From the IMG/VR virus record IMGVR_UViG_3300010885_025649, positions 148,498 to 212,497 of that record: a stretch of DNA of 64,000 nucleotides; one strand, written 5' to 3'. The stretch's first letter is position 1. The number at the start of each line of letters is the position of its first letter. Positions 1-12,558 of this stretch are shown here, one piece after another. The notes under the pieces are model-generated. The model saw only the letters and a list, made by a program, of their open reading frames with translations, was not told the DNA's origin and did no database searches. Position numbers and translations under genes: made by a program.

Positions 1-15
1 CCCTGGAAGCAATCC

Positions 16-303
16 TTAATCTTGTTTAGGTCGATCAGTTTTATAATAGTTCTCCAAGAACATATCTGCAGTATAATCAGGAAAGTACCACCGGATAAAA
101 GCTTCAAAGAAGGCAGGATCTGTATTCTCCTGAAACCATTCTTCTTCTTTGCCATTAATCACCAAGACAATACCATTCCCTTCACAGAAGAAGTGAGTGA
201 TGGAAGCTTTGGTAATCACCGTAGCGTATTGACCCTCCCCCAACCAAATAAAGGCAGCAGGGTGATCATGGTCACTTACAGTAAATCGCATTGGTATGTA
301 CAC
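16..303 (-). CDS. hypothetical phage protein
   Basis: ORF 16..315; GGAGG 5 nt before GTG at 303 suggests this start. Confidence 0.6.
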   Translation of the reverse strand: MYIPMRFTVSDHDHPAAFIWLGEGQYATVITKASITHFFCEGNGIVLVINGKEEEWFQENTDPAFFEAFIRWYFPDYTADMFLENYYKTDRPKQD

Positions 304-457
304 AGCAACCTCCAAGTAACGTGTATTAGAGGATTAACGTACCTCCAGAAGACTCTTACGAATCAACGCCGAATGCTAGATAGCAAGAGCACCCACACGA
401 TTGCAGCTTAATCTGTGAGGTTAGACTCAGGTCAATCAGGTGACCTTTAAATTGATC

Positions 458-853
458 TTAGCCTGGGATGGAGAGATACTCCCCATTCCCGAAGCGCTTG
501 ATCTGTTCAGGCAGCTCATCCAGAGCTATAGTTGGCCAATAGGGTTGTAAAACCCCCAAAGCTAAAGCGGCCTCCCACACCGCTTTATTATCAACCAAGG
601 GTAGCGTGACCAACACCTTGTGGTGCGCCGGGATGTCTTTGAGGTCTGATGGGTGACGGAGATAGAACTCCGCTCCCAGGTCTTCATCTTCGTCGAGATT
701 GGTGTGCCCTGGGCAGGGCTTGAATACCACCTGGGTCTGAGGATTCTGGCGGCGTGCCTCCTCCTCAGCTACAAGTTCACGGCTACGGACTTGAATGCGG
801 AGCTGGCGCTCCAATGGATACTCAGACATGATCTCTTGAACTGTACGTCCCAC
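458..853 (-). CDS. hypothetical protein, N-terminus resembles HigA/XRE-type antitoxin N-terminal helices
   Basis: MGRTVQEIMSEYPLERQLRIQVRSRELVAEE; GGAG upstream; no HTH follows. Confidence 0.5.
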   Translation of the reverse strand: MGRTVQEIMSEYPLERQLRIQVRSRELVAEEEARRQNPQTQVVFKPCPGHTNLDEDEDLGAEFYLRHPSDLKDIPAHHKVLVTLPLVDNKAVWEAALALGVLQPYWPTIALDELPEQIKRFGNGEYLSIPG

Positions 854-972
854 GAGTCTTCTCCAACTAGAGTTAGTAATGACCCGTCTCAGTATCGTCC
901 CCCAGGCGAGGCCGGATCAAGCGCCCTGGGTGTACGGCTAGGAGTTAAAGGCATCCAAGCTAGCCTGCTAAA

Positions 973-1260
973 CTAAGAGAAACTGTCTAACATAGCCTGC
1001 ACAGCAGCATAGTCCTCTCCCATAAGCTGCTGTAACAGCGGCTCATAGTTAGAGTTACTATACCAACCTGCCAAAGCAAGGCTGAGGGCTTGACGTTGCC
1101 GACTACTCAGGTGAGCAATGTCTGCCTCACAAAGGCAGATATCTAGTAGGCCAGCTTGACCAAAAACATTATCCCACAGAGGGAATGCTACCGCTGCAGG
1201 CCAACGGCGGCATCCGGTCTCCTTCTGGATCTTATCAATCAACTGTTCAACTAATTCCAT
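973..1260 (-). CDS. hypothetical protein
   Basis: 95 aa ORF, AGGAG upstream. Confidence 0.65.
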   Translation of the reverse strand: MELVEQLIDKIQKETGCRRWPAAVAFPLWDNVFGQAGLLDICLCEADIAHLSSRQRQALSLALAGWYSNSNYEPLLQQLMGEDYAAVQAMLDSFS

Positions 1261-1322
1261 GATGATCTCCTAAAGTAATGTAAACAAGTATTATTAATTC
1301 AACTCCCCTAGGAGAGCATGTA

Positions 1323-1393
1323 ACCAATACCCCAGTCAGGAGTCGAACCTGACTGACTGCCTTTGCTAGAGGGAGTCACCGGATGGGGTTGGT
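1323..1393 (-). ncRNA. D-armless tRNA-like structure
   Basis: Minus strand: ACCCCA/TGGGGT stem, GTCAGG-TTCGACT-CCTGAC T-arm, hairpin with loop CTAGCAA; no D-arm, no encoded CCA. Confidence 0.45.
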
Positions 1394-1409
1394 GCTCTGT
1401 CATCTACAG

Positions 1410-1793
1410 TTAATTCCGGTAGAACCCTAAGCACCCAATGGGCTTAGGCTCAGTCGCACTCTTGTACACAGTGCCTCGAACAGTAAGTAGACGATCTGTG
1501 CGCAAGCCTAGCGCTTTACACGCGCTAACGTATAAGGCAGAGACCACGTAGTAATGATCGGTATCTTGTGGATAAGCATCCACCGATGTAAACTCAAACG
1601 TTTTGCATGGTATACCATAGACCGCCTCTGTAAAGCGTTCCTCTTGTTTAGCATTGAGGAGGGTACCCGATGGCTCAATAACTTGTGCAGCCACCTGACC
1701 ATCTTTTACAAGTAGCTTCCGAATCGAAGCATCAAATACAGTACTGTCCTCACGAAACAAGTTGATAATGTGCGGGGTCATGTTGTTGATCAT
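1410..1793 (-). CDS. conserved phage hypothetical protein (N.TPH.I / P.SG / YVVS pattern)
   Basis: 127 aa, AAGGAG RBS; motif pattern recalled from phage hypotheticals. Confidence 0.65.
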   Translation of the reverse strand: MINNMTPHIINLFREDSTVFDASIRKLLVKDGQVAAQVIEPSGTLLNAKQEERFTEAVYGIPCKTFEFTSVDAYPQDTDHYYVVSALYVSACKALGLRTDRLLTVRGTVYKSATEPKPIGCLGFYRN

Positions 1794-1904
1794 GTCAGCT
1801 CCTTTAAAGCAAGGTTTGTTCGCAGGGTTAGGAAACCTGCTCGCCTTGGTCGGTCCAAGGACGGCTCCTTTTATTTAAAGCCCGTGGAGTCAGGGCTGTT
1901 AGAT

Positions 1905-2216
1905 CTAAAGGATGTAACCATCCTTAGGCATGTTAGCCTGAAGGAATTCCAGAATTCGCTGCTGCTGTTGCTGCGTGGTTTTGGGGAAATGATTAAAGAT
2001 AGGTCGGCGCCCATCTTTGTTGTGGATAGAATCCACTCTGACAACAATTTGAGAATCGTTCTCCTCAAGAACCCCGCTTGTCTTGTACATCCCACCCCAA
2101 AGGTGGGGGAAGTACCAGGTTATAGCTTCCATCTCCAACGTCGCACCATTGAAACGCAGCTCGCTAATCCGAGCATTATCCCGTTCAACTAACTGTAAGT
2201 CAGTAACAATGTTCAC
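1905..2216 (-). CDS. hypothetical protein
   Basis: 103 aa, AAGGAG before GTG. Confidence 0.65.
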   Translation of the reverse strand: MNIVTDLQLVERDNARISELRFNGATLEMEAITWYFPHLWGGMYKTSGVLEENDSQIVVRVDSIHNKDGRRPIFNHFPKTTQQQQQRILEFLQANMPKDGYIL

Positions 2217-2345
2217 GATGCTCTCCTTATCCCGTATCGTGGGTATCCGCCAGTCAGGTCAGACTGGATGACCAGGGCTTAGGACCTGGACCCCAGCAGG
2301 TGCTAGGGTGACCTTCATGCCTACCGGAGCAGGCACCCTTCGGTA

Positions 2346-2534
2346 TTAAGTTGCAGATTCAATAGTATATTGAAGTTTATGAGCTATTGCGTATGCTATA
2401 ACTCCTTCAGCTTCCTTTTCATCAAGAGCGCACCGATCCTCATAATGGCTAGTTAGCCAAAAGCACCGCTCTGATAAAGTAATAACCCAACCATTCAAGA
2501 CTTTGTTCCCCACCAACAAAATGGCGTATTTCAC
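2346..2534 (-). CDS. hypothetical protein
   Basis: 62 aa, AAGGAG before GTG. Confidence 0.6.
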   Translation of the reverse strand: MKYAILLVGNKVLNGWVITLSERCFWLTSHYEDRCALDEKEAEGVIAYAIAHKLQYTIESAT

Positions 2535-2583
2535 AGCGCTCTCCTTTTGTTCCGCAACGTGCTTAGGGGCGCATGCACAATAA

Positions 2584-2783
2584 GCCCTCAGTCCAGCAAC
2601 ACCAAGGGGTGCTGCTACACCACAGCGCTCCGGGGTTTACCCCTGTCATGCTGCAATGCTGGAGGCCCGAGCCGTACTCCTGGCCAGACCTCCAAAACCC
2701 TCAAGAGGATTTGGCTGTTAACCCTCAGGGGAGCCAGCCCCCCAGGAGGAAGGCTGTTTGGGCCGAAGGCGAAGACTGAGGGC
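2584..2783 (-). ncRNA. candidate ~200-nt multibranch structured RNA
   Basis: 10-bp closing inverted repeat GCCCTCAGTC (2584-2593)/GACTGAGGGC (2774-2783) enclosing about 7 hairpins; no credible minus-strand ORF. Confidence 0.55.
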
Positions 2784-2849
2784 GAAACTTCGGGTCGGTA
2801 CTAATAAAAGGGTCGGTAGACCCTAGGGAAACTAGGATAATCTACCGAC
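2784..2849 (-). promoter_or_regulatory. junction J1: terminator hairpin (CCTAG-GGAAA-CTAGG family) plus motif, second variant motif
   Basis: GTCGGTAGA..TCTACCGAC immediately after RNAP stop. Confidence 0.7.
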
Positions 2850-2859
2850 GCGTTAAGTG

Positions 2860-5667
2860 TTAGTCAATGCCTAGGTCAACCACACGGTTATATTCTGCTA
2901 CAACTTGTTTCTCCACCCCAAGGGTCAGAGCCACAAAGTAGAAGAAGCCTAGGTGTTTGATGCTACCTTCTCCTTGTTTAACCTTATCTGCTGTAAGAGC
3001 AGTAAAGTACAGGAGTTGGTCCTCAGAGAAGCCAAGAGTGTAAGCTTGAAGCTTATGCTCAATAGCAACCATGAGCGCACCATAGTTAGCCCCTTGAGAC
3101 ACTTGATCAAGGAGGATACGGTAGTCCACCTCAATAGCCTTATAGGCAACCCGAACATCTTCATACTCATCAGTGGGCAGAGCTTGACCCATGATCTCCC
3201 AGCGAGAGAGGTTAGAGGTCAAGGTATCCACATCAAGTACAGGATGCTCAGTCAAGTTGGTGAGGGTTGACCACACGTAGTCTGCTACGTGACCATAGCC
3301 TAGAGAACGAATCTCCGCCAAGTGGGGAGACAATTTCTCATAGGTGGTAGCTTCTGCCACAGCCAAAGCCCGTGCTTTGGTAGCAGTAAAGCCTTGATCA
3401 CGCAGCTCATTAACCCGATCTACCAGCCCATGATCTTTCCACACTTCCTTAAGGTGGGAAATAGCACTAAGGATTGGGCTGATATCTTTGTAGGGCATTT
3501 CACCCACGCCACCCAAAGCTTTCCACAACTTAGTAGCTTCAAGACGAAAGGCATGTAAGCTCAAAGAGCTATCAACCGTCTTCTTCATGCTGTTGAGGAC
3601 CGCTTGGATGTAACGAGCGAACTTGAACCTGATAGATGGCACCGCGCCTTCAGCACCGCTATCATCACCTTTGGTAAAGGCGGCAATCAGACCTGCACTA
3701 TGGTACAGGAACATCAAGGCCTTACCGAGGTTAACAGCGACGCCCACTTTAGCATCCCCTTCTTTGACCACCATAGCCATGACGTTCTTCCACGTAGAGT
3801 CTCCACTATTGGAGTGCTCAGTCTTCGTGGTAAGCGAACCATGGTTGCTGATGCGGGTATCATTTAGGGTAAGGAACTCAGGTAAGATCCCCCCTTCACA
3901 ATCCCCGTCAAAGTCACCTTGAATTTGCCCTTGAGTATAGGGAGTCATCAAGAACGCTGTTTGCTCGCCATGATCAATGACCTTTAAGGCCACCCAGCTA
4001 AAGTCAAACAACGCGGGTGCGCGATGGAAGATCATCACAGAACCCAGGGGGTATTTCCCTTTCAGTTCTGCTGGAACAATTACTTCATCATCTTTAATCC
4101 CGGTGTGGGGTAGGATGGGAAGATTGTATCCAGGCAAGCGATGAGTCAACATACGCTTCTTGAAGGCGTTAGTGAACTCGCTTGTGACATCTTCAAGGAT
4201 GGACTTGGCCAGCGGAAGACCAGCAGCTTGCATACGTAAGGCTAAACCTTGCGTACCAAACTGAGAACCGGCCTCATGCTCTTTGGCCAACGTGAGGAAC
4301 TTGCCCTCATCCCAGAGCTTAGCCATCGCTTGCACCTCTGCAAGAGAGGATACATGGTAGGCAGCTTTTAACTCAGGGTGGGCAAGAGTATCCATGAAGC
4401 GCAGATCTACCCCAAAGTTCAGAAGAGTCTGACGGGGATTAATCCACACGTTCATGATCAACAGTTCCTCAGGTTTGAGGGTGAGCTGATCCCCGTGCTT
4501 GGGCAAAGCGGCACCTTTTGCGCATTGGGTGAAAGCCTCCACAATAAAGCACAAAGAAGCCTCAGGATTGATCTCACGCGCCGCTGCTACCAAGCGTTTC
4601 TGCTTGTGATCAGTAGGCTTATTGATCATACCTTTGGCATTCAACATGCCGTGGTTAAGGAGAGCCGTACCTTGAGCAGGCGTGCAGGTATGCCCCACAG
4701 CCTCAAAGATTTGCTCATCATCAACCACTAACGCAAAGGGGCCATCCATGCTGACCTTGTATTTAATGCCAAGCTCTTTCGCGCTGACAAATACAATGTT
4801 AGCCAGGGAATGAAACAGGGGCGCACCAGGACGAAGGAGCGTTCTAGCCAGTTTATTAGCTAGGGCTGCATCCTCAGTCTGCTGAGGTTTATCTGTCCAC
4901 ACATAGGTCCCAGATGCACCTTTAACCCCTAACAGGTATGGGTGATTAGGGAACGCTGCATGAGCATGCTCAGCAACAGGAGCCATGAAATGCTCTTTGC
5001 CTACATAGGCTTGAGTCAGTTCCGCGCTTTCGATCTGGTACGTTGAAATAGGCTTGTTGGCCCGCACCGCTTCTGCCTCAGCCTTCTTAACGGCCTCATG
5101 ATCTTTGAGGACACTAGCTTTATAATCAAACATGTCAGCGCCCGTAGGACGACCAACTTGTTGAGTAATCAAGCCATTCTCAAACACCATAGGTTTGTAC
5201 CATCCGGCCGCAAATGGGTCAGAGGTTTTAACCTTAGGCAACGGTTTCTGTGGCTGATTGAACGCACCCTTGGTAAAGCTGATGCTATCTTTCCGCGTTA
5301 CTTCAGAAGCATGTGCTTCTTTTTCACACGGGAATTTCACATCAGCATAAGCCCGAGGGAAGGGGCGCTCTTGCTGAGTCCATGCGCGCACTACGCCGTT
5401 GTGGAGCTTCTTAACGCTAACAATCTTATCCAGATTACCATCAGCTTCGATCTTATACAAGATCTTAGCGACAGAGCTGAATGCAGACTGCGGCATTTTG
5501 AAGCCGTCAATAAAGAGGATAGGGTTACCCCGATCATCCCGGACGATTTCCACAAGGTGCGACGAGATAGCCTTCTTGTAGAAGAAGTCAATCACGTAGC
5601 TGCGTACAATCTCATCGGTCTCGGAGACCAATTGAATGCGCGCTTTGACGTTCATGGTTTTAGCCAT
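2860..5667 (-). CDS. single-chain two-barrel RNA polymerase (YonO/cellular-RdRP-like)
   Basis: ILPHTGIKDDEVIVP...VMIFHRAPAL...QGDFDGD (DFDGD at 3901-3915); upstream SMDG...PAQG...NAKG fits the second barrel. Confidence 0.85.
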   Translation of the reverse strand: MAKTMNVKARIQLVSETDEIVRSYVIDFFYKKAISSHLVEIVRDDRGNPILFIDGFKMPQSAFSSVAKILYKIEADGNLDKIVSVKKLHNGVVRAWTQQERPFPRAYADVKFPCEKEAHASEVTRKDSISFTKGAFNQPQKPLPKVKTSDPFAAGWYKPMVFENGLITQQVGRPTGADMFDYKASVLKDHEAVKKAEAEAVRANKPISTYQIESAELTQAYVGKEHFMAPVAEHAHAAFPNHPYLLGVKGASGTYVWTDKPQQTEDAALANKLARTLLRPGAPLFHSLANIVFVSAKELGIKYKVSMDGPFALVVDDEQIFEAVGHTCTPAQGTALLNHGMLNAKGMINKPTDHKQKRLVAAAREINPEASLCFIVEAFTQCAKGAALPKHGDQLTLKPEELLIMNVWINPRQTLLNFGVDLRFMDTLAHPELKAAYHVSSLAEVQAMAKLWDEGKFLTLAKEHEAGSQFGTQGLALRMQAAGLPLAKSILEDVTSEFTNAFKKRMLTHRLPGYNLPILPHTGIKDDEVIVPAELKGKYPLGSVMIFHRAPALFDFSWVALKVIDHGEQTAFLMTPYTQGQIQGDFDGDCEGGILPEFLTLNDTRISNHGSLTTKTEHSNSGDSTWKNVMAMVVKEGDAKVGVAVNLGKALMFLYHSAGLIAAFTKGDDSGAEGAVPSIRFKFARYIQAVLNSMKKTVDSSLSLHAFRLEATKLWKALGGVGEMPYKDISPILSAISHLKEVWKDHGLVDRVNELRDQGFTATKARALAVAEATTYEKLSPHLAEIRSLGYGHVADYVWSTLTNLTEHPVLDVDTLTSNLSRWEIMGQALPTDEYEDVRVAYKAIEVDYRILLDQVSQGANYGALMVAIEHKLQAYTLGFSEDQLLYFTALTADKVKQGEGSIKHLGFFYFVALTLGVEKQVVAEYNRVVDLGID

Positions 5668-5705
5668 GAGTTGGTATTCTCCTTACTAGTGATAGCTTAG
5701 TTGAG

Positions 5706-6281
5706 TTACGCAGCCAATTTGACTGCAAACGCAACAAGGCTAGCAAAGGTGTCTTTGGTGACAACCTTTTTAGCTGCAGGCTCCTTCACTTTAGTAGCAG
5801 AAGCTACCGCAGTAAAGAGTGGCACGGCCACCATTTTGATTTGGCGAGCCGCCCAAGCAGCCGCAGATGCAGCTACTTGTTTGCGTGCCACGCTGGCCGC
5901 TACTTGAGCGCGACGGACTTGCGCCCGCGCAGTCAATACCGCCTGAGCCTTGCGGCACAGTTTGGTGAGCTTATTAACCAACTTGGCTACGGTAGCACCC
6001 AGCAAGCGCTGTTGCGCCCACTGGTACATACCTTTAGTAGCCAGGGCTTTAAGCCCCTTGTTAGCCCGGGCCAACACGGCTTTCACCGCATTGGTTGGTA
6101 GGCTCGCCACGTTACCGTGGAAAGCCCCTTGTTCCGCAACTGCAAGGGCAGCACGAAAAGTAACCGATTTGGCCAGAGTGGCCTTAATGCTGGCCGCTTT
6201 AGCGACCTTTAAAGCCGTAGCTGCAGAGCAGCCACGGAAAGCCACCATATAGGCGGCTAAGTTGTTAACTGTGTTTGACAT
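5706..6281 (-). CDS. Ala/Lys-rich basic protein, possibly nucleic-acid binding
   Basis: 191 aa, very few acidic residues; AAGGAG RBS; directly upstream of RNAP gene. Confidence 0.65.
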   Translation of the reverse strand: MSNTVNNLAAYMVAFRGCSAATALKVAKAASIKATLAKSVTFRAALAVAEQGAFHGNVASLPTNAVKAVLARANKGLKALATKGMYQWAQQRLLGATVAKLVNKLTKLCRKAQAVLTARAQVRRAQVAASVARKQVAASAAAWAARQIKMVAVPLFTAVASATKVKEPAAKKVVTKDTFASLVAFAVKLAA

Positions 6282-6342
6282 GGTTTATTCGCTCCTTTAA
6301 AGTAACGGGTTACCACAACCCACACGCCCAGAAGGAGGGGTG

Positions 6343-6356
6343 CAAATAAAAAGTCG
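6343..6356 (-). promoter_or_regulatory. junction J2: motif without hairpin
   Basis: CGACTTTTTATTTG upstream of the basic protein/RNAP pair. Confidence 0.65.
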
Positions 6357-6388
6357 GTAACCAAAAGGAGCAACCACATACACAATAA

Positions 6389-6487
6389 CTATTGAAGCTT
6401 ATACTTGGGTCGTTCTAAGGGGCCGACCAAACCTCCACGGTCAACAGCAATCACCAAACCGAGCTCAACACTGCTAACAACAGTCAT
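6389..6487 (-). CDS. 32-aa small protein
   Basis: AAGGAGG then MTVVSSVELGLVIAVDRGGLVGPLERPKYKLQ*; translated by hand. Confidence 0.45.
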   Translation of the reverse strand: MTVVSSVELGLVIAVDRGGLVGPLERPKYKLQ

Positions 6488-6547
6488 GTCTAATCCTCCT
6501 TCAAGAATAGGCAGAGAGAAGGCTCCCTGCCTACAAGTTAAAGGAGT

Positions 6548-6844
6548 TTATTTGGCAACAAATTCCCTGCAACCTCTATCTACACTGTGCGGATTAACCG
6601 CACACGACAACGCGGAGCTAAAGCTGTAATACTTACAGCCATAACAAGGCCTTAAAGCCTTTACAATCTCCCAGTCTTCCTCCGAACAGTAGCCTGAGGC
6701 TAGAAAGAAACTAACCTCCTGCTCCGCATACTCAGCTTGACGCTCTTCCTCTTGAGCACAGAGAAGGGCAAGGGCATCAGCCATAATCTCCCCTTGAGAT
6801 TGATCTTTGATTCCCTGTGCTTCAGCGTGTGTGTAGTAACCCAT
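6548..6844 (-). CDS. protein with C-terminal CxxC..CAVNP..C domain (DUF6464-like)
   Basis: CYGCKYYSFSSALSCAVNPHSVDRGCREF. Confidence 0.65.
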   Translation of the reverse strand: MGYYTHAEAQGIKDQSQGEIMADALALLCAQEEERQAEYAEQEVSFFLASGYCSEEDWEIVKALRPCYGCKYYSFSSALSCAVNPHSVDRGCREFVAK

Positions 6845-6877
6845 GGTGCATCTCCATTACGCCACAAATCGAGGTGG

Positions 6878-6948
6878 CTAAATAAAGAGTCGGTATATAC
6901 AGAAAGAAAGTCGTTAACTCCTAGGGAAACTAGGATAAGTTAACGACT
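6878..6948 (-). promoter_or_regulatory. junction J3: hairpin plus tandem motifs
   Basis: AGTCGTTAACT-CCTAGGGAAACTAGG-ATA-AGTTAACGACT. Confidence 0.75.
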
Positions 6949-6955
6949 AGATTAA

Positions 6956-7261
6956 TTAAGCGGTGTAATAGTCAACTACAACCAAATTGCCTTTCAAGAA
7001 GGCAACAAGATCATAGTACTCGCCTTTATTAACATAAATCAAAACCTTCTTAGCCCCAAGAGCCAAGAAAGCTTGAAGCATTTCGCATGCGGTTGCATGT
7101 GAGAGGTTTTTGAACTTGGTGCGATTAGCACCAGTGTTGTAATCTTGCTTAGCCGCACGGAAGCGATTATGCTTGAGGACTAGCACTTGGCGATCCTCCA
7201 CCTCTGAAAACGAGATGCAAAAGGTCAACGCTGGGGTGATAACATTATGTTCTTGTAACAT
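6956..7261 (-). CDS. hypothetical protein
   Basis: ATG at 7261 after GGAGAG; the longer ORF-track start runs through the leader repeat. Confidence 0.65.
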   Translation of the reverse strand: MLQEHNVITPALTFCISFSEVEDRQVLVLKHNRFRAAKQDYNTGANRTKFKNLSHATACEMLQAFLALGAKKVLIYVNKGEYYDLVAFLKGNLVVVDYYTA

Positions 7262-7300
7262 GTGTCTCTCCAATAAGCCGCCTTTAAAAGAGGGCGAACT

Positions 7301-7329
7301 CAAATAAAGAGTCGGGGTTTCCCCCGACT
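7301..7329 (-). promoter_or_regulatory. junction J4: short hairpin plus motif
   Basis: CAAATAAAG-AGTCGGGG-TTTC-CCCCGACT. Confidence 0.75.
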
Positions 7330-7336
7330 TGTTTAT

Positions 7337-7504
7337 TTAGATCTTACCATTCTTAAGAATGGCCTCCTCCCATTCTTGCATAGCCATCCCGAAGACGATC
7401 TCCTGATCATCTTCAGGCGCAGCAGCGGCTGCTGCATATGCTTTGCACACTAGCATAAATAACAACCACTGCTGAGCAGTGGGAGTTACACAATAAACTC
7501 TCAT
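7337..7504 (-). CDS. 55-aa small protein
   Basis: GGAGAG then MRVYCVTPTAQQWLLFMLVCK...NGKI*; translated by hand. Confidence 0.6.
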   Translation of the reverse strand: MRVYCVTPTAQQWLLFMLVCKAYAAAAAAPEDDQEIVFGMAMQEWEEAILKNGKI

Positions 7505-7541
7505 GTTCTCTCCAATAAGCCACCTTTAAAAGAGGGTAGCT

Positions 7542-7555
7542 CAAATAAAGAGTCG
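7542..7555 (-). promoter_or_regulatory. junction J5: motif without hairpin
   Basis: CGACTCTTTATTTG. Confidence 0.65.
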
Positions 7556-7597
7556 CGTTATCACACACAATAATTATGGAACTCTATACTTGGGTCG

Positions 7598-7675
7598 TTA
7601 TAGGTAGGCAACAGCCACACCAACGCTAGCGTTAACCAAACTAAACATGTAACAACTAATCAAAAGCCTGCTCAT
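7598..7675 (-). CDS. 25-aa hydrophobic peptide
   Basis: GGAGG then MSRLLISCYMFSLVNASVGVAVAYL*. Confidence 0.4.
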   Translation of the reverse strand: MSRLLISCYMFSLVNASVGVAVAYL

Positions 7676-7728
7676 GATTAACCCTCCAAAGTAAGTGGGA
7701 GGAAGGCCCCCCACTTTAGACAGGTTAA

Positions 7729-7872
7729 TTATTTCTTAGCTGCGGCAGCTTCTTCATCACGCTCATCTTGAAGCCATTGCTCCCAGTAAGCATCCATCTG
7801 GAGCTTATGAATCCACAGATTCCAAGCCAGTGTGTGGTTCACCAACTTGACAATCATCTTCACTTTAGTCAT
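7729..7872 (-). CDS. 47-aa small protein
   Basis: GGAGAG then MTKVKMIVKLVNHTLAWNLW...AAAAKK*. Confidence 0.6.
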   Translation of the reverse strand: MTKVKMIVKLVNHTLAWNLWIHKLQMDAYWEQWLQDERDEEAAAAKK

Positions 7873-7910
7873 GGTACTCTCCAATGACTCACCTTTAAAA
7901 GAGGGCAAGT

Positions 7911-7940
7911 CAAAGAAAAGGTCGGGATTTCTCCCAACCT
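7911..7940 (-). promoter_or_regulatory. junction J6
   Basis: CAAAGAAA-AGGTCGGGA-TTTC-TCCCAACCT. Confidence 0.7.
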
Positions 7941-7949
7941 TTTAATCAA

Positions 7950-8372
7950 TTAAACAGTGTAATCACGGCACAAAGTGCCAAACCCTAGGGGGTTTACAGT
8001 ACACGGAAGCCGCCACTCCCCGGTGGCGTATTTACACGCCTCACAGGGATTAGGTTCCTGTTCCGCACACCAACGGTTGTAAGCTTCTACCGCATCTGGC
8101 TCAAGCTGTTCATCTTGAGCAAGGTGGTAGGCCTCCCGGCGCTCTTGCTCCGTCAGCTCCCGCGGGTCTAACCATGCGTCATAAGCGGGAGAGTTCTCCC
8201 AAAGACACATAGCGATTTCTTCCCGAATCGCCCGTTGGCGATCAGTGAGCAGACGAGTTGGAACTCCGACCCAAGGATCTTGCAGCACAGACTGCTTAGC
8301 AGCCCAGCGCTCAAAATCCCAGTGGTTTTGGTTGACCAAAACGATCTTGGTAGCCTGAGTAACTTTAAACAT
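7950..8372 (-). CDS. protein with C-terminal CxxC..CTVNP..C domain (DUF6464-like)
   Basis: CEACKYATGEWRLPCTVNPLGFGTLCRDYTV; start MFKVT after AAGGAG. Confidence 0.7.
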   Translation of the reverse strand: MFKVTQATKIVLVNQNHWDFERWAAKQSVLQDPWVGVPTRLLTDRQRAIREEIAMCLWENSPAYDAWLDPRELTEQERREAYHLAQDEQLEPDAVEAYNRWCAEQEPNPCEACKYATGEWRLPCTVNPLGFGTLCRDYTV

Positions 8373-8396
8373 TTGCGCTCCTTTAATAGTGGAGGA

Positions 8397-8472
8397 CAAA
8401 TAAAGAGTCGATAATACTTATCCTAGAAAAGAAGTCGGCAATCCCTAGAGAAACTAGGATAGATTGCCAACT
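8397..8472 (-). promoter_or_regulatory. junction J7: hairpin plus tandem motifs
   Basis: AGTCGGCAATC-CCTAGAGAAACTAGG-ATA-GATTGCCAACT. Confidence 0.75.
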
Positions 8473-8476
8473 CAAA

Positions 8477-8989
8477 TTACCACTTCATGGTAGCCTTAGA
8501 CCAGCCATCCGGAGCTGCATCTAATACTTCCATCAGATCTCCCGCCAGGTGGTAGCTAGCAGGAGAGGGCTTTCCAGAAGGCAAGGTCAGCTTCTGAGGC
8601 TCTTCAGCCTCGAAGTCAACCTGAAGAAATAAACGCACCATTGCATCTATTCCTATAGCTTTGGAAAGCCGAAAGGGAGGTAAGTTGCCCCGGTACGAAA
8701 CCGGCGATAGCGTCACGTCAACGCCAATCACACGATTCTCATACTGAAAGACCACATCAGCACCGTATACCCAATCCAGAATGGACCGGGCAGAACAGGT
8801 GTTGATAGGTCTCCCAATGATCCCCTCCAAGCTTTTCAGCTTACGAACACCTAAGAACCGCTGAGCGGTAGCTAGAAGTTCGACTTCGCTTGGACGAGGC
8901 CATGAGGCAAAGGTAGAGGGATGCAGCTCAATCAAACGAATGAACTGCAACTCAACTACCTTAGGATCGTAATACCCATCTTGGGACAT
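8477..8989 (-). CDS. hypothetical protein, possible PD-(D/E)XK nuclease fold
   Basis: LDWVYGADVVFQYENRVIGVDVT; start MSQDG after GAGG. Confidence 0.5.
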   Translation of the reverse strand: MSQDGYYDPKVVELQFIRLIELHPSTFASWPRPSEVELLATAQRFLGVRKLKSLEGIIGRPINTCSARSILDWVYGADVVFQYENRVIGVDVTLSPVSYRGNLPPFRLSKAIGIDAMVRLFLQVDFEAEEPQKLTLPSGKPSPASYHLAGDLMEVLDAAPDGWSKATMKW

Positions 8990-9067
8990 ACGAGTTCCTC
9001 TTGTATTGTGCCAACTCTTGGACGACCACACCAAGAGTAAGAACTACTGACACAGGATTGTAGGACT

Positions 9068-9116
9068 CAGAAAGAAAGTCGCTAACTTCTAGGGAAACTA
9101 GAATAGGTTAGCGACT
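9068..9116 (-). promoter_or_regulatory. junction J8
   Basis: AGTCGCTAAC-TTCTAGGGAAACTAGAA-TAG-GTTAGCGACT; compensatory change in the inner stem. Confidence 0.75.
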
Positions 9117-9122
9117 AATTAA

Positions 9123-9377
9123 TTACGCGTAGTAACGGCAGGAGCTGCCATTAGCACGGGCGGTACGGCCCGCACGATCAAACTTGACGCGGCTTTTGCC
9201 GTCACGGTTGTTTTTGCTACGGCTAAAGCAGGAACGGCAAGCGCTGGGATTACCCCAGAACCCGCCGTCAAACTTGGCATCGCCTGCCAAGAAGGTTCCG
9301 GAAGCAACGTAATAAAAGAAGGTGTTACCACCTTTCCCGTATACGTAGCTTTCCTCATCGTGAGTAACTTTAAACAT
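9123..9377 (-). CDS. 84-aa basic hypothetical protein
   Basis: start MFKVT after AAGGAG; leader nearly identical to that of 7950..8372. Confidence 0.65.
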   Translation of the reverse strand: MFKVTHDEESYVYGKGGNTFFYYVASGTFLAGDAKFDGGFWGNPSACRSCFSRSKNNRDGKSRVKFDRAGRTARANGSSCRYYA

Positions 9378-9401
9378 TTGCACTCCTTTAATAGTGGAGA
9401 A

Positions 9402-9455
9402 CAAATAAATAGTCGATATATACAGAAAAGAAGTCGAGGGAAGGCCCCTCAACTT
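9402..9455 (-). promoter_or_regulatory. junction J9: hairpin plus tandem motifs
   Basis: AAGTCGAGGG-AAGGC-CCCTCAACTT. Confidence 0.75.
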
Positions 9456-9461
9456 CATTAA

Positions 9462-10034
9462 TTAACGTTTACGCGCCGCCCGAAGGTGGAATACAAAACG
9501 ACTGGGTAAACGATAGCGTTCTGTAAGCGGATCACTCAGGACTGAGATCAGAAGATCCCAATCCCTCTTGGGTAGGGAAGCCACCTTAGGCATTATATCA
9601 AATAACACCCCTGCATCACAAACCCTCCATCTATACCTGATGAAGTTCAGATCTCCATCAAGAAGGTATTCTCTACGCAGGCAAGGTTTTACCTTACCAT
9701 TGTAGTAAACAGAGATTACTCCTCCATCCCGGCGAATGCCAAAGTATGCATTTCTCATTTGTATGAGAATGTATACTAAAGCATTAATTAGCATAAAGTG
9801 CGCATGCACTCGCCCATTATACTTGAAGGGAACTTTAGGCCCCACATCAAATATAATGTCAACATCTGGAAGAAACCCATAGTGGCAGGCTTCCCAAGCC
9901 GTGGCCACCCCGGAGATGGGGAGCCACACCAACACATCCCCTGTAGACAGGGTTACTGTCCGAGTGATTTCAAAATCAAAGGGACACGAAATAAACTGAG
10001 CATACTGCTCATTTGAAAGCATGTAGTGTTTCAT
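9462..10034 (-). CDS. hypothetical protein, paralogue of 11175..11813
   Basis: shared FDF.I/V..V..T.G.V....P and KR..D.LI..LS.P...LRAARK. Confidence 0.65.
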   Translation of the reverse strand: MKHYMLSNEQYAQFISCPFDFEITRTVTLSTGDVLVWLPISGVATAWEACHYGFLPDVDIIFDVGPKVPFKYNGRVHAHFMLINALVYILIQMRNAYFGIRRDGGVISVYYNGKVKPCLRREYLLDGDLNFIRYRWRVCDAGVLFDIMPKVASLPKRDWDLLISVLSDPLTERYRLPSRFVFHLRAARKR

Positions 10035-10097
10035 GGCTTTTTAAACTCCCTTTAGAGTACAGGTAACCACACCTGGAGTCCACAAAAGGGATGAACT

Positions 10098-10144
10098 CAG
10101 AAAAGAAGTCGTAGCTAGCCCCATCATGGCGTTCAGCTACGACT
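10098..10144 (-). promoter_or_regulatory. junction J10
   Basis: CAGAAAAGA-AGTCGTAGCT..AGCTACGACT. Confidence 0.7.
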
Positions 10145-10234
10145 ATCTTAGATATACTCTCTCCTATGCGGTTATTGCAGTAGTACGAGAGCTTCTGTTC
10201 CCAGGCTTATTCAGCCCGATGTATAGAGAAACTC

Positions 10235-10429
10235 TTAGCGGATGTAGATCCGTTTCTGAGTTTTCTCTACTGTGCAAGTTGCGCTATTAAACGCAGGATC
10301 GCACAGGGTATACAACAGTTGATATTCTTGGCGAACATCTTTGTACTGTGTATTACCTACATACACACTATATCCTTGGTACATGACCAAGTGGATAAGT
10401 GTGCTTAGAGAGATTAGTAATGGGTGCAT
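10235..10429 (-). CDS. hypothetical protein
   Basis: 64 aa, GGAG upstream, long structured leader. Confidence 0.55.
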   Translation of the reverse strand: MHPLLISLSTLIHLVMYQGYSVYVGNTQYKDVRQEYQLLYTLCDPAFNSATCTVEKTQKRIYIR

Positions 10430-10545
10430 TACTAACTCCGTAAGTCCCTCCGAGTAACGTCCTTAGGGGTCTACGTATCCGCTATTAATTCTCTTCGACA
10501 AGAGAACCACAGGTTAAACCCGGAGTTGACGGATAAAGTGCAACT

Positions 10546-10594
10546 CAAATAAAGAGTCGGAACTTCCTAGGGAAACTAGGATAAAGCTCCGACT
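10546..10594 (-). promoter_or_regulatory. junction J11
   Basis: AGTCGGAACTT-CCTAGGGAAACTAGG-ATA-AAGCTCCGACT. Confidence 0.75.
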
Positions 10595-10601
10595 ATATCA
10601 C

Positions 10602-11057
10602 TTAAACTGTGTAGTCACGACACCCCTGCCCAAAGGCCAGGGGATTTACGCCACAAGGGAGGAGAGCCTCCCCTGTGGCGTATACACAGCCCTTGCAAAG
10701 GTTTTCCGACTCCGGATATGCCGGTGGCGGACTATATAATTGGTATGCCGGGTGAAGGGCAATATTGCCCTCAAATACCGGTGGCAGATCTTGCCACCGG
10801 TCCTCCCACACCCATACCGTTATGTGACATGCCCAGAAGGGCAGTAACGGTATGGCACCGTCTGCATCCTGCACAGGCAGGATGACCATATAATTATTAA
10901 ATTGCGGATCCTGATAGTGGATCCGAACGCGGGGAGTTTCCCTCGCCTCAATCTTAGCCGTGCTAAGATTAAGGTTGGCTTGGGCTTTCGCCCGTTTTGC
11001 TGCATACGCAGCGTATCCGGGAAACGTAGCCAATGTAGCCAGGTTGGTACGTGCCAT
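10602..11057 (-). CDS. protein with C-terminal CxxC..CGVNP..C domain (DUF6464-like)
   Basis: CKGCVYATGEALLPCGVNPLAFGQGCRDYTV; start MARTN after GGAGAG. Confidence 0.7.
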   Translation of the reverse strand: MARTNLATLATFPGYAAYAAKRAKAQANLNLSTAKIEARETPRVRIHYQDPQFNNYMVILPVQDADGAIPLLPFWACHITVWVWEDRWQDLPPVFEGNIALHPAYQLYSPPPAYPESENLCKGCVYATGEALLPCGVNPLAFGQGCRDYTV

Positions 11058-11095
11058 GTGTCTCTCCAATAAGCCGCCTTTAAAAGAGGGCAGCT

Positions 11096-11171
11096 CAAAT
11101 AAAGAGTCGATAATACTTATCCTAGAAAAGAAGTCGGAACTTCCTAGGGAAACTAGGATAAAGCTCCGACT
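11096..11171 (-). promoter_or_regulatory. junction J12: hairpin plus tandem motifs
   Basis: hairpin identical to J11, spacer identical to J7 and J13. Confidence 0.75.
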
Positions 11172-11174
11172 TAG

Positions 11175-11813
11175 TTATGCTTTACGAGCAGCACGAAGGC
11201 GCGCCACTAAATCTTTAGGCACTTGACGACAAGGACCAGACAAGATACCTATCAAGGTATCATACTCTCGCTTTGAAAACGCGTCCATCCCAGCGATTAG
11301 CCAGGACTCTCCATCGGGACGTTCAACCCTCCAACCGGTGTTAACCGGCACTGGGGACCAAGTCCACCAGCTACCATGAGGTAAGGTAGACTTATGCAGC
11401 AAGGCATAAATCTTGTTACCCCGCTCTAAGTAAAGCGTGTTTCCACTAATTTCTAGCCTCAAACTAAACCTGACCAAGATCTTGATCACCGTGGCAAGGT
11501 GCCACTTATATACGTAAAGCTTAACATTGTAGCGGTTAATCTCCGGTGGCTCAACGGGAGCCAACATTACTGCGGCTACCCAAAGGAGGCAGCGCACCGC
11601 TGCTGGAGGGCAACTTACACCCTCCGCATAGTACGAGCCAGGGGCTAGACACCCCGGAATTTGTGATACCTGTAGGAGAGCGGTATAGCCCTCCTTGGGA
11701 ATGAGTAGAATAACTCGACCCATGGTTGTGGGCACGACGGCCCTCACATTAAAGTCAAACATCCCGGTCAGGATGGACGAAACTTTTTCTTCGGTCACGT
11801 TTACTTTAAACAT
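11175..11813 (-). CDS. hypothetical protein, paralogue of 9462..10034
   Basis: 212 aa, ends LRAARKA. Confidence 0.65.
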   Translation of the reverse strand: MFKVNVTEEKVSSILTGMFDFNVRAVVPTTMGRVILLIPKEGYTALLQVSQIPGCLAPGSYYAEGVSCPPAAVRCLLWVAAVMLAPVEPPEINRYNVKLYVYKWHLATVIKILVRFSLRLEISGNTLYLERGNKIYALLHKSTLPHGSWWTWSPVPVNTGWRVERPDGESWLIAGMDAFSKREYDTLIGILSGPCRQVPKDLVARLRAARKA

Positions 11814-11854
11814 CTTGATGTCTCCAATAAGCCGCCTTTAAAAGAGGGCGAACT

Positions 11855-11920
11855 CAAATAAAGAGTCGATAATACTTATCCTAGAAAAACTGTCGAATGT
11901 AGTGCTAGTACATCCGACAG
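11855..11920 (-). promoter_or_regulatory. junction J13: hairpin plus tandem motifs
   Basis: CTGTCGAATGTA..TACATCCGACAG. Confidence 0.7.
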
Positions 11921-11976
11921 CTTGGTGGTCAGTTATTTAGATTGTCTATCCTCGCAGACCTACGAGGGTTAATTGG

Positions 11977-12420: not shown

Positions 12421-12484
12421 GTTCTCCTTTCTCCCGCGTGCAGATAACCAGCTAGTTATCCTACGTCTTATGGAGTTCAATCAA

Positions 12485-12558
12485 CAAATAAAGAGTCGAT
12501 AATAATTAATCTAGAAAAGAAGTCGCTAACCCCTAGAGACTAGGATAAGTTAGCGACT
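12485..12558 (-). promoter_or_regulatory. junction J14: hairpin plus tandem motifs
   Basis: AGTCGCTAACC-CCTAGAGACTAGG-ATA-AGTTAGCGACT. Confidence 0.75.

What the first reader, a model, noticed from the sequence alone, without database searches (positions are those of the whole stretch)
2584..2783. ~200-nt multibranch non-coding RNA directly downstream of the RNAP gene
Seen on the minus strand: a perfect 10-bp closing stem GCCCTCAGTC/GACTGAGGGC encloses successive hairpins. These include CAGCCT..GGGCTG, GGCT..AGCC, AAATCCTC/GAGGGTTT, GGAGGTCTG/CGGGCCTCC, GCAGC..GGGGTAAACCCC..GCTGT and AGCAGCACC-CCTT-GGTGTTGCT, with G-U wobbles favouring this strand. The first G of the closing stem lies 10 nt after a variant CGAC motif, i.e. 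at the predicted +1. I do not recognise the family. Inference: a discrete phage ncRNA (RNAP cofactor, decoy, sponge or ribozyme) or an elaborate leader for 2346..2534.
Basis: partly seen in the sequence, partly recalled or inferred. Interest (0 to 1): 0.72.

Follow-up and report, generated by a model that had tools for sequence, protein, structure and literature searches.

The report
Structured RNA leader after phage polymerase
A very stable 200-base folded RNA domain does sit in the non-coding gap after a phage RNA polymerase gene, but it has no known family and no diverged relatives to test, and it looks most like a structured leader for the next genes, in a region where nearly all the RNA is unusually folded.

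Summary
Window 2584-2783 (minus strand) folds into a closed six-hairpin domain: -112.6 kcal/mol, z -5.4, with closing-stem pair probabilities of at least 0.99 in context. 15 of its 73 pairs are G-U. The signal weakens on the plus strand and disappears with DNA energy parameters. No ORF covers it on the coding strand. No Rfam family matches.

The neighbouring 935-aa gene is a real but very divergent single-chain two-barrel RNA polymerase. It has a DFDGD motif and fold matches to QDE-1, crAss phage phi14:2 virion polymerase, P74 gp62 and P32 gp64.

The element is not unique in kind. It lies in a roughly 15-kb stretch of a GC-rich island in a 212-kb freshwater jumbo phage. There, sense-strand RNA structure is pervasive (median z -3.3; 21% of 200-nt windows reach z -5.4 or lower), including inside ORFs. 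25 copies of a 16-nt CGAC motif precede small genes in that stretch. The element is the lowest-energy 200 nt of the stretch and the strongest outlier within its nearest 5.7 kb.

Covariation could not be tested, because the only relatives are 99.94-99.96% identical. No RNA-seq run was listed.

Best reading (about 0.4): a cis-acting structured 5' leader for the operon after the polymerase gene. A discrete ncRNA remains possible.

The parts
2860..5667 (-). 935-aa single-chain two-barrel (beta'-like) RNA polymerase gene. It is the last gene of the CGAC-motif cassette array.
   Evidence: The protein carries QGDFDGD. All seven PDB sequence hits of the family profile are weak (E 0.05-0.55), and they are all largest or beta'-type RNAP subunits matched at the DxDGD loop. 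The confident core of the AlphaFold model (residues 285-610) matches QDE-1, crAss phi14:2 virion RNAP, P74 gp62 and P32 gp64 RNAP at Foldseek E 1e-6 to 3e-4. There is no Pfam or PHROG hit.
2807..2854 (-). Terminator-like cassette hairpin (GTCGGTAGA...TCTACCGAC) with the conserved core TTATCCTAGTTTCCCTAGG, followed by a T-run.
   Evidence: Inverted repeat I9. The same core hairpin precedes CGAC motifs at 15376, 6913 and 2815, with close variants at 10559 and 9081. The consensus scan flags part of it as terminator-like.
2800..2815 (-). CGACCCTTTTATTAG, the best local copy of the island's 16-nt motif (consensus CGACTCTTTATTTGAG). Candidate promoter.
   Evidence: The motif has 25 copies on the minus strand only, most of them (20) 24-65 nt upstream of an SD plus start codon. 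Its role as a promoter is inferred.
2784..2797 (-). Second, degenerate CGAC element (CGACCCGAAGTTTC). With the next bases it reads GAAGTTTCGCCCTC, which resembles the start of canonical cassette UTRs (GAGTTCGCCCTC).
   Evidence: GTACCGACCC is also found in locus L004, upstream of a closed RNA domain.
2584..2783 (-). The closed multi-hairpin RNA domain. P1 is 2783-2773 with 2594-2584. P2 is 2770-2763 with 2728-2721. P2a is 2756-2748 with 2743-2735. P3 is 2712-2706 with 2701-2695. P4 is 2694-2682 with 2673-2660. P5 is 2659-2617. P6 is 2616-2595.
   Evidence: fold, z-score, pair probabilities. (strand and RNA specificity). (no Rfam family). (no ORF).
2713..2719 (-). AACAGCC heptamer in the single-stranded junction between P2 and P3. 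A second copy at 2752-2758 is half in P2a.
   Evidence: Unpaired probability is 0.95-1.00 for all seven bases. The 212-kb genome has only 4 minus-strand copies, and 3 of them lie within about 900 nt after the RNAP gene. Four copies lie in the matching non-coding stretch of L005.
2535..2583 (-). Linker from the fold to the next gene: UUAUUGUG tail, then a local hairpin that pairs the Shine-Dalgarno sequence (AAGGAG, 2546-2541) and the GTG start.
   Evidence: SD G residues unpaired with probability 0.02-0.12; the first two start-codon bases 0.01-0.03, the third 0.63. The terminator-like alternative hairpin at 2608-2585 plus CTTATTGTG is, where the number of such sites did not exceed chance.
2346..2534 (-). 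62-aa ORF (GTG start) that the fold would lead into.
   Evidence: Its SD-spacer-GTG-AA region repeats at 2212-2228 for the next ORF (repeat D8). No Pfam or PHROG hit.

Best explanation
The element is a cis-acting, highly structured 5' leader domain of the transcription unit that starts just after the polymerase gene.

Proposed sequence of events:
1. Transcription of the pre-early cassette array ends at the conserved hairpin plus T-run (2854-2800).
2. A new transcript starts at one of the two CGAC elements (2815 or 2797), so the 200-nt domain sits within about 0-20 nt of the RNA's 5' end.
3. The closing stem and six tightly packed hairpins bury that 5' region. This would protect the downstream mRNA (the 62-aa ORF and, by inference, the genes after it; no further canonical CGAC motif lies downstream) from 5'-end-dependent and single-strand-specific RNases. 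It would also insulate that mRNA from the upstream unit.
4. A separate small hairpin gates the ribosome binding site.

What is shown: the fold, its RNA and strand specificity, its non-coding nature, its position relative to the motifs and the ORF, and the polymerase identity of the neighbouring gene.

What is inferred: that the CGAC motif is a promoter, where the transcript starts, that no termination occurs before the ORF, and the stabiliser or insulator role itself.
For: - **Fold:** it is real and RNA-specific.
- **Non-coding:** no ORF on the coding strand.
- **Position in a cassette:** it sits in a cassette of the island's standard form, hairpin then CGAC motif then UTR then SD then ORF. 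For most of the 25 motif copies (20) the UTR is 24-65 nt; here it is about 250-270 nt, and the fold accounts for the extra length.
- **UTR match:** the first bases of the fold (TTTCGCCCTC) match the first bases of canonical cassette UTRs.
- **No strong terminator:** none lies between the fold and the SD. The only candidate is a weak UUAUUGUG tail, and terminator-like sites in the region are no more frequent than chance (8 found, 5.9 +/- 2.6 expected).
- **No downstream motifs:** no canonical CGAC motif occurs downstream of 6356, so the genes after the RNAP may depend on this start region.
- **Most stable gap:** the intergenic gap holding the fold is the most stable of all gaps downstream (-0.45 kcal/mol per nt).
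- **Distant homologue loci:** the two GC-rich loci with distant RNAP homologues also have their longest non-coding, strongly folded stretch directly after the polymerase gene. L004 has 650 nt, including a 258-nt domain closed by a 20-bp stem (z -5.4). L005 has 394 nt (z -3.3).
- **Precedents (from my own knowledge, not checked here):** 5'-terminal stem-loops stabilise ompA mRNA and phage SP82 early RNA. T7 has an RNase III hairpin (R1.1) and tandem promoters directly after its polymerase gene.
Against: - There are no transcript data, so the 5' end, the 3' end and even transcription itself are unverified (no RNA run was listed).
- Structure conservation has not been shown. The single SNP against the relatives falls in an unpaired base. 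A covariance model of the fold finds nothing in L003-L005 or elsewhere in the 82 kb of this genome that was searched.
- The whole region is hairpin-rich, ORFs included. The fold may therefore need no function of its own.
- Most of the other motif copies (20 of 25) have short UTRs of 24-65 nt without such a domain, so a stabiliser is not generally required.
- The closing stem followed by UUAUUGUG could end a discrete roughly 210-nt RNA instead.
Confidence: 0.4

Rival explanations
1. It is a discrete, trans-acting small RNA of about 200-220 nt. It would be transcribed from the CGAC element and ended by the closing stem plus the UUAUUGUG tail. Its single-stranded AACAGCC junction and its GGA-containing loop would bind a protein, possibly the polymerase or another early protein.
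For: - The fold is closed at both ends by a 10-11 bp G+C-rich stem immediately followed by a U-rich tail. A local alternative hairpin at 2608-2585 is also followed by that tail.
- At 62% GC it is well above the local 49%.
- AACAGCC is fully exposed in the junction. It is almost confined to the non-coding RNA after the polymerase gene, both here and in L005.
- The fold is a compact, self-contained unit in every context folded.
Against: - The U-tail is weak (5 U in 8), and terminator-like sites do not exceed chance.
- No antisense targets of 14 nt or more exist in the phage genome; matches of 12-13 nt are at chance level.
- There is no Rfam family, no paralogue and no detectable homologue.
- The AACAGCC statistics are post hoc, and L004 lacks the motif.
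- The ORF's SD lies only 37 nt after the fold.
Confidence: 0.2
2. The fold has no dedicated function. It is simply the non-coding instance of a region-wide selection for, or mutational bias toward, hairpin-rich sense RNA. It could be a spacer or a decayed gene cassette that kept the regional hairpin habit.
For: - Median z of 200-nt minus-strand windows across window 1-16000 is -3.3, and 21% of windows reach z -5.4 or lower.
- ORFs such as 5706-6281 (z -10.8) and 14914-15306 (z -9.8) are chains of near-perfect hairpins.
- Long-range closing stems also occur inside ORFs (I4, I6, I7).
- A perfect 10-bp closing pair alone is within chance.
- The next gap downstream (2217-2345) is a similar hairpin chain.
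Against: - It is the lowest-energy 200-nt segment of the 16 kb by 13 kcal/mol, and the only window within 1-5700 to reach z -5.4.
- Its GC content is 13 points above the local level.
- The hairpins abut with almost no linkers and are enclosed exactly by the stem.
- It lies in the weakly structured end of the gradient, where the background median z is -1.4 to -2.4.
- The RNAP homologues in L004 and L005 also carry their longest folded non-coding stretch at this position.
Confidence: 0.25
3. It is a catalytic or processing RNA: either a new self-cleaving ribozyme, or a structured cleavage signal that cuts the polycistronic early RNA after the polymerase message. The twister-like element 240 nt downstream would do the same for the next gene.
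For: - A sub-threshold Twister-P5 match lies at 2273-2344. It scores 23.5 bits against a gathering score of 37.6, with E 0.016 in an 801-nt search. P1, P2 and P4 are present, and the L4 loop UCCUAAGC can still form the T2 pseudoknot with GGG (and my own reading of that alignment).
- From my own knowledge: T7 places an RNase III site directly after its polymerase gene.
- From my own knowledge: self-cleaving ribozymes tend to cluster in phage-like contexts.
Against: - No ribozyme model touches 2584-2783 at any threshold.
- The twister-like hit is below threshold and dropped out of the wider scan.
- That hit lacks the conserved GC of the T1 pseudoknot.
- The element has no continuous helix of 20 bp or more for RNase III.
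- The loops show no GNRA or receptor motifs.
Confidence: 0.07
4. The signal acts at the DNA level: hairpin or cruciform extrusion used by the phage polymerases or by replication, as with the N4 hairpin promoters or the T7 origin after gene 1.
For: Tandem promoter-like motifs sit directly after a polymerase gene. The phage appears to carry several two-barrel polymerase-like proteins.
Against: With DNA parameters the fold is not better than shuffles on either strand (z -1.7 and -2.5). 15 of the 73 pairs are G-U, so the complementary strand loses 17 kcal/mol.
Confidence: 0.05

Closest known systems
5'-terminal mRNA stabiliser stem-loops (E. coli ompA leader, Bacillus phage SP82 early-RNA stabiliser, ermC leader). 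Recalled from the literature, not checked here.
   Same: A stable structure at or very near the 5' end of a message, upstream of the ribosome binding site, acting in cis.
   Different: Known stabilisers are single hairpins or short purine tracts of 20-60 nt. This is a 200-nt closed six-hairpin domain, and its distance from the true 5' end is unknown.
Phage T7 region directly after gene 1 (RNase III site R1.1 and tandem promoters phi1.1A/phi1.1B). Recalled from the literature, not checked here.
   Same: A structured RNA element and tandem phage-promoter-like motifs immediately downstream of the phage's own polymerase gene.
   Different: T7 RNAP is a single-subunit right-hand polymerase; this one is a two-barrel enzyme. 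R1.1 is a roughly 60-nt irregular hairpin and an RNase III substrate; here no helix exceeds 13 bp. There is no sequence relation.
Thermus phage P23-45 transcription cascade: a virion two-barrel RNAP reads a strongly conserved AT-rich promoter motif upstream of pre-early genes, including the gene for a second, non-virion two-barrel RNAP (PMC10770324).
   Same: The 935-aa protein's model matches P74 gp62 and P32 gp64. A strongly conserved T-rich 16-nt motif precedes about 25 small genes, and the polymerase gene is last in that array. A giant 3188-aa neighbour carries GDYDGD.
   Different: No structured RNA domain after the polymerase gene came up in the promoter-related passages of that paper that I read. 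This phage is a 212-kb myovirus-like genome (portal and sheath hits). The cascade here is inferred from sequence only.
Genome-scale ordered RNA structure of RNA viruses and RNA phages such as MS2. Recalled from the literature.
   Same: Pervasive, sense-strand-specific folding that runs through coding regions.
   Different: Here it is confined to about 15 kb of a dsDNA phage and graded along the region. The genome itself is not RNA.
Rfam families (6S RNA, riboswitches, tRNA-like elements, large phage-associated RNAs such as GOLLD and ROOL, self-cleaving ribozymes)
   Same: Its size class and phage context overlap with several of these.
   Different: No family reaches its gathering score anywhere in the 64-kb window. 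The best sub-threshold hits on the element are 14-17-bit microRNA models, which are noise.

Membership tests
Any Rfam 15 family | Covariance-model score at or above the family's gathering threshold | tested here: not met
   No gathering-level hit in the whole window. With lax filters on 2200-3000, only mir-296 (17.1 bits; gathering score 66) and mir-15 (14.2; gathering score 57) touch the element.
Conserved structured ncRNA (general criterion) | Compensatory base changes in homologues | not testable with these tools
   The only sequences carrying it are 99.94-99.96% identical, with one SNP in an unpaired base. IMG/VR and metagenome scans, an exhaustive HMMER search with the neighbouring protein, and model R1 gave no diverged copy.
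Thermodynamically exceptional fold | MFE well below dinucleotide shuffles, on one strand, and robust in context | tested here: met
   z -5.41 with 0 of 200 shuffles as good. Plus strand z -3.6. P1 pair probabilities at least 0.99 in a 461-nt context. However, 21% of island windows reach the same z.
Cis-regulatory 5' leader / riboswitch-like element | Lies between the transcription start and the ribosome binding site of the regulated gene | tested here: inconclusive
   It lies between the promoter-like CGAC motifs and the SD of ORF 2346-2534. The motif's promoter role and the start site are inferred.
Cis-regulatory 5' leader / riboswitch-like element | Expression platform: mutually exclusive terminator/antiterminator folds, or SD sequestration coupled to the sensor domain | tested here: inconclusive
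   The SD and GTG are paired by a separate local hairpin. An alternative 3' hairpin (2608-2585) competes with P6 and P1. No coupling between them can be shown.
6S-type RNA polymerase decoy | Long, mostly double-stranded rod with a central open-promoter-like bubble | tested here: not met
   The fold is a five-way junction of short hairpins. There is no 6S model hit.
Intrinsic terminator | G+C-rich stem directly followed by a U-tract | tested here: inconclusive
   P1, or the local hairpin at 2608-2585, is followed by CUUAUUGUG. The scan flags it, but sites in the region (8) do not exceed shuffles (5.9 +/- 2.6).
tRNA / tmRNA / tRNA-like | Cloverleaf recognised by ARAGORN or the Rfam tRNA clan | tested here: not met
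   ARAGORN finds no gene in the window. No Rfam hit.
Twister ribozyme (for the neighbouring element at 2273-2344, not the finding itself) | Rfam gathering score; P1, P2 and P4 helices; T1 and T2 pseudoknots; conserved L4 loop | tested here: inconclusive
   23.5 bits against a gathering score of 37.6. P1, P2, P4 and an L4-like loop UCCUAAGC are present and T2 is possible. The GC that should form T1 is CA in the alignment. The consensus features are recalled from memory.
Two-barrel (beta'/Rpb1-type) RNA polymerase (for the neighbouring 935-aa gene) | DxDGD metal-binding loop in a double-psi beta-barrel; fold similarity to known two-barrel polymerases | tested here: met
   DFDGD motif. Profile hits are limited to RNAP largest subunits at that loop, and are weak (E 0.05-0.5). 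Foldseek E 9e-7 to 3e-4 to QDE-1, phi14:2 virion RNAP, P74 gp62 and P32 gp64. The model is confident only in the core (mean pLDDT 47).

The most novel reading that the evidence does not exclude
The 200-nt domain is one dedicated module of a previously undescribed phage strategy.

In this reading, a jumbo phage has a cascade of two-barrel RNA polymerases. DxDGD motifs occur in the 3188-aa, 935-aa and 1171-aa proteins. The phage writes its first-expressed roughly 15 kb as deliberately hairpin-saturated sense RNA, graded from the start of the region. The purpose would be to make uncoupled, phage-polymerase-made transcripts resistant to host RNases or RNA-targeting defences.

The closed domain after the polymerase gene, with its exposed AACAGCC sites (shared with a 24%-identical homologue locus), would be a protein- or polymerase-binding RNA that marks the switch from the first to the second transcription class.
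Probability: 0.15. Interest if true: 0.8.

Novelty: new member of a known kind. Interest (0 to 1): 0.45.

Why it matters
Taken alone, the element is an orphan structured leader or small RNA in an uncultured freshwater jumbo phage. It is worth recording, but cannot be tested without transcripts or diverged relatives.

Its setting is the more unusual part. It sits in a GC-rich, ORFan-only island with:
- 25 copies of a phage-specific 16-nt motif;
- a very divergent single-chain two-barrel RNA polymerase, with only 8 hits at E 0.001 or better (the query's own cluster included) among 1.8 billion representative proteins;
- sense-strand RNA folding at levels normally seen in RNA viruses.

If that architecture is adaptive, it bears on how phage-polymerase transcripts made without coupled ribosomes survive in the host. 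It would also offer a new set of promoter, terminator and leader parts that belong to a two-barrel polymerase.

Tried and rejected
- **Rfam:** gathering-level scan of the whole window. E-value scans of 2200-3000, 1-16500, 1230-1950, L003-L005 and L013:11500-15200. Nothing hit the element; only sub-threshold noise plus the twister-like hit.
- **ARAGORN:** no tRNA or tmRNA.
- **Phage collection:** BLASTN and TBLASTN gave no match.
- **Homologue hunts:** The search for related loci with the RNAP in IMG/VR and metagenomes found only 100%-identical proteins. The word-index protein search found only the query's own cluster. Exhaustive HMMER gave 8 hits, the nearest at 26% identity.
- **Pattern search:** AACAGCCAAA...GAGGGTTTT in IMG/VR returned the near-identical contig and six stretches that look like chance matches, three of them copies of one sequence and two of another.
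- **Covariance model R1:** built from the fold, it found no second copy in 100 kb that included L003-L005.
- **BLASTN between the non-coding stretches of the window, L004 and L005:** only short matches with E above 1.
- **Sequencing runs:** two DNA runs and no RNA run were listed. Laying the contigs gave no variation in the element.
- **Antisense or paralogue search in the phage genome:** nothing beyond chance.
- **A second promoter class downstream of the RNAP:** CCGACC-type words are not enriched.
- **Other DxDGD proteins:** hhalign against the RNAP profile and PDB searches were uninformative.
- **The genome search 'relatives':** not available for virus records.
- **Plus-strand ORFs 2547-2804 and 2573-2779:** judged to be by-products of GC-rich sequence on the non-coding strand. 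This was not tested further.

Full report
**What the window is.** The window is the last 64 kb of a 212,497-bp IMG/VR virus record, estimated 91% complete. Its source is a freshwater metagenome. A Mu-type portal and a tail-sheath domain mark it as a large tailed, contractile-tail phage. Most of the genome is 30-38% GC. Genome 136-164 kb (window about -12,000 to 15,900) is 42-50% GC. All plausible genes in this island lie on the minus strand. None of about 25 proteins tested has a Pfam family above threshold.

**The observation.** An 11-pair closing stem (ten Watson-Crick pairs and one U-G) encloses a nested arm (P2/P2a) and four directly abutting hairpins. The energy is -112.6 kcal/mol and z is -5.41 against 200 dinucleotide shuffles. 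In a 461-nt context the closing pairs keep probability 0.99-1.00, and the mean over all 73 pairs is 0.87.
- Fifteen pairs are G-U. The plus strand is 17 kcal/mol weaker (z -3.6).
- With DNA parameters neither strand beats shuffles convincingly. The signal is therefore specific to minus-sense RNA.
- The minus strand has no ORF of 30 aa or more in the 325-nt gap.
- A perfect 10-bp closing pair alone is within chance. The interior hairpins alone give z -4.1.

**The neighbouring gene.** The 935-aa ORF has no Pfam, PHROG or phage-database match. The evidence that it is a polymerase is:
- It contains QGDFDGD.
- Its few distant homologues share an RDxDGD-x-(M/L/A/G)-S-(L/V/I)-x-x-P block that resembles the beta' NADFDGDQMAVHVP loop.
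- All profile hits in the PDB are largest or beta'-type RNAP subunits matched at that loop, though the E-values are weak (0.05-0.5).
- The AlphaFold model is poor overall (mean pLDDT 47) but confident in residues 285-610.
- That model matches QDE-1, the crAss-like phi14:2 virion polymerase, and the P74 gp62 and P32 gp64 polymerases at Foldseek E 9e-7 to 3e-4.

'RNAP gene' is therefore right, but it is a single-chain two-barrel enzyme, not a T7-type one.

**The CGAC motif.** A 16-nt motif with consensus CGACTCTTTATTTGAG, and a sister form CGACTTCTTTTCTRG, occurs 25 times on the minus strand between 6356 and 15877. A shorter form of the pattern, CGAC[TC][CT]T, occurs 20 times on the minus strand of window 1-16500, once on its plus strand and once in the other 47.5 kb of the window. 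Most copies (20 of 25) lie 24-65 nt upstream of a Shine-Dalgarno sequence plus start codon. Several follow a conserved hairpin, TTATCCTAGTTTCCCTAGG.

This is the pattern of a phage-specific promoter set with terminator-promoter cassettes. The closest documented analogue is Thermus phage P23-45. [quoted passage not shown]

In this phage the polymerase gene is the last gene of the motif array. The neighbouring 3188-aa protein carries GDYDGDMATI, and a 1171-aa island protein carries AADFDGDQ. For these two proteins I have motif evidence only.

**Anatomy around the finding.** Reading the minus strand 5' to 3':
1. Polymerase stop codon (2860).
2. Cassette hairpin (2854-2807).
3. CGACCCTTTTATTAG (2815-2800).
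4. CGACCCGAAGTTTC (2797-2784).
5. The fold (2783-2584).
6. UUAUUGUG and a small hairpin that pairs the SD and the GTG start (2583-2532).
7. A 62-aa ORF.

The bases GAAGTTTCGCCCTC at the start of the fold resemble the canonical post-motif UTR start GAGTTCGCCCTC. So the fold begins where cassette UTRs begin, but the UTR here is about 250-270 nt instead of 24-65 nt. No canonical motif occurs further downstream. This anatomy favours a leader. The stem-plus-U-tail could in principle end a discrete RNA, but terminator-like sites here do not exceed chance.

**The context changes the weight of the z-score.** Sense-strand folding is pervasive in this part of the island.
- In 150-nt windows, 67-83% have z below -2 between genome 148 and 164 kb, against about 10% elsewhere.
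- In 200-nt windows the median z is -3.3, and 21% reach -5.4 or lower.
- The median deepens steadily, from -1.5 (window 1-2500) and -2.4 (the polymerase ORF) to -6.0 (14001-15900).
- ORFs with good ribosome sites are chains of near-perfect hairpins.
- The left half of the island has broadly similar GC (42-48%) but ordinary z, so composition is not the cause.

Against this background the finding is not unique in kind. It is still the lowest-energy 200 nt of the 16 kb, by 13 kcal/mol. It is the only segment within 1-5700 to reach z -5.4. It is 62% GC in a 49% GC neighbourhood.

**Comparative evidence.** All sequences carrying the element are 99.94-99.96% identical. The one SNP is in an unpaired base, so covariation cannot be assessed.

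The polymerase has only 8 hits at E 0.001 or better (its own cluster included) among 1.84 billion representative proteins. The two GC-rich loci with homologues (L004 and L005, 24-25% identity) also carry their longest non-coding, strongly folded stretch directly after the polymerase gene.
- L004 has 650 nt. It includes GTACCGACCC followed by a 258-nt domain closed by a 20-bp stem, z -5.4.
- L005 has 394 nt, starting with a hairpin plus CGACTCTTTTACTAG.

This is positional and architectural similarity only. The covariance model of the fold finds nothing in these loci, and BLASTN finds only short matches with E above 1.

One short word stands out. AACAGCC has four minus-strand copies in the whole genome, and three of them are in non-coding RNA within about 900 nt after the polymerase gene. 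Two are in the fold, one of them fully unpaired. In L005 all four sense copies lie in the matching stretch; L004 has none. This was noticed post hoc and should be treated as a lead.

**Expression.** No RNA-seq run was listed as holding the sequence. The two DNA runs add nothing. Transcription, ends and processing are therefore untested.

**Conclusion.** The most economical reading is a cis-acting structured leader at the head of the transcription unit after the polymerase gene, likely serving stability or insulation (confidence about 0.4). The rivals are:
- a discrete protein-binding small RNA (0.2);
- no dedicated function beyond the regional hairpin habit (0.25);
- a ribozyme or processing signal (0.07);
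- a DNA-level signal (0.05).

It belongs to no described family. Whether it founds one cannot be decided with the sequences now available.

Noticed in passing
window 1260-15900, minus strand: Pervasive sense-strand RNA structure that runs through ORFs and deepens toward 15900. Median z of 200-nt windows goes from -1.5 to -6.0. ORFs such as 5706-6281 and 14914-15306 are chains of near-perfect 8-12 bp hairpins. I know of no description of this in a dsDNA phage.
   Followed up: partly
window 6356-15877, minus strand: 25 copies of a 16-nt motif (CGACTCTTTATTTGAG or CGACTTCTTTTCTRG), most of them (20) 24-65 nt upstream of an SD plus start codon. Several follow the conserved hairpin TTATCCTAGTTTCCCTAGG. 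This is a candidate promoter/terminator cassette set for a phage polymerase.
   Followed up: partly
genome 136,000-164,400 (window about -12,500 to 15,900): A 28-kb island of 42-50% GC in a 30-38% GC genome. All genes are on one strand, and no protein there has a Pfam family above threshold. The same right-hand island junction is present in a second IMG/VR contig.
   Followed up: partly
window 2273-2344, minus strand: Sub-threshold Twister-P5 match (23.5 bits; gathering score 37.6; E 0.016 in 801 nt). It has P1, P2 and P4, an L4-like loop UCCUAAGC, and a possible P3 hairpin. The T2 pseudoknot can form, but the conserved GC of T1 is missing. It lies between the 62-aa and 103-aa ORFs.
   Followed up: partly
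window 1325-1394, minus strand: A tRNA-like fragment: an acceptor-like stem plus a T-arm with loop TTCGACT (GGTTCGACTCC). It lies in the gap before ORF 973-1260, near where the strongly structured zone ends. Neither ARAGORN nor Rfam calls it.
   Followed up: partly
window 19979-19996 (in ORF 16832-26398, minus strand) and L013:7343-10858 (genome about 138221): Two further large proteins carry beta'-type metal-loop motifs: GDYDGDMATI at residue 2135 of the 3188-aa protein, and AADFDGDQ in the 1171-aa protein. This suggests up to three two-barrel polymerase-like proteins in one phage. Sequence searches gave no further support.
   Followed up: partly
window 2752-2758, 2713-2719, 1894-1900 (minus strand); L005:4240-4392: The heptamer AACAGCC is almost confined to the non-coding RNA after the polymerase gene, both here and in a locus whose polymerase is about 25% identical. 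It is absent from L004.
   Followed up: partly
L013:12324-13869 (genome 142,324-143,869): A 1.5-kb AT-rich stretch without ORFs splits the island. It has direct repeats (for example ATAACTTCTATAAATCAGATTAGA and CAGTGAATATACTTAGATTTA) and sigma-70-like promoters, including TTGACT-17-TATAAT before the 188-aa gene. It could be a regulatory or origin region.
   Followed up: no
window 2212-2228 and 2530-2546: Two consecutive genes share the initiation region AAGGAGAGC-NNN-GTGAA (repeat D8).
   Followed up: no
window 15938-16807, plus strand: The lone plus-strand gene at the island boundary encodes a PAS-domain protein with a weak holin-like C-terminus.
   Followed up: no
window 13340-13744, minus strand: Weak, sub-threshold similarity of a 134-aa early protein to 2H phosphoesterases, including anti-CBASS Acb1 (E 0.0025) and the tRNA-ligase CPD domain (E 0.00085).
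   Followed up: no
window 7302-7432, minus strand: Sub-threshold PrrB/RsmZ-type match (23.3 bits; gathering score 44) in the ORF-poor, thrice-repeated cassette region 7265-7936.
   Followed up: no
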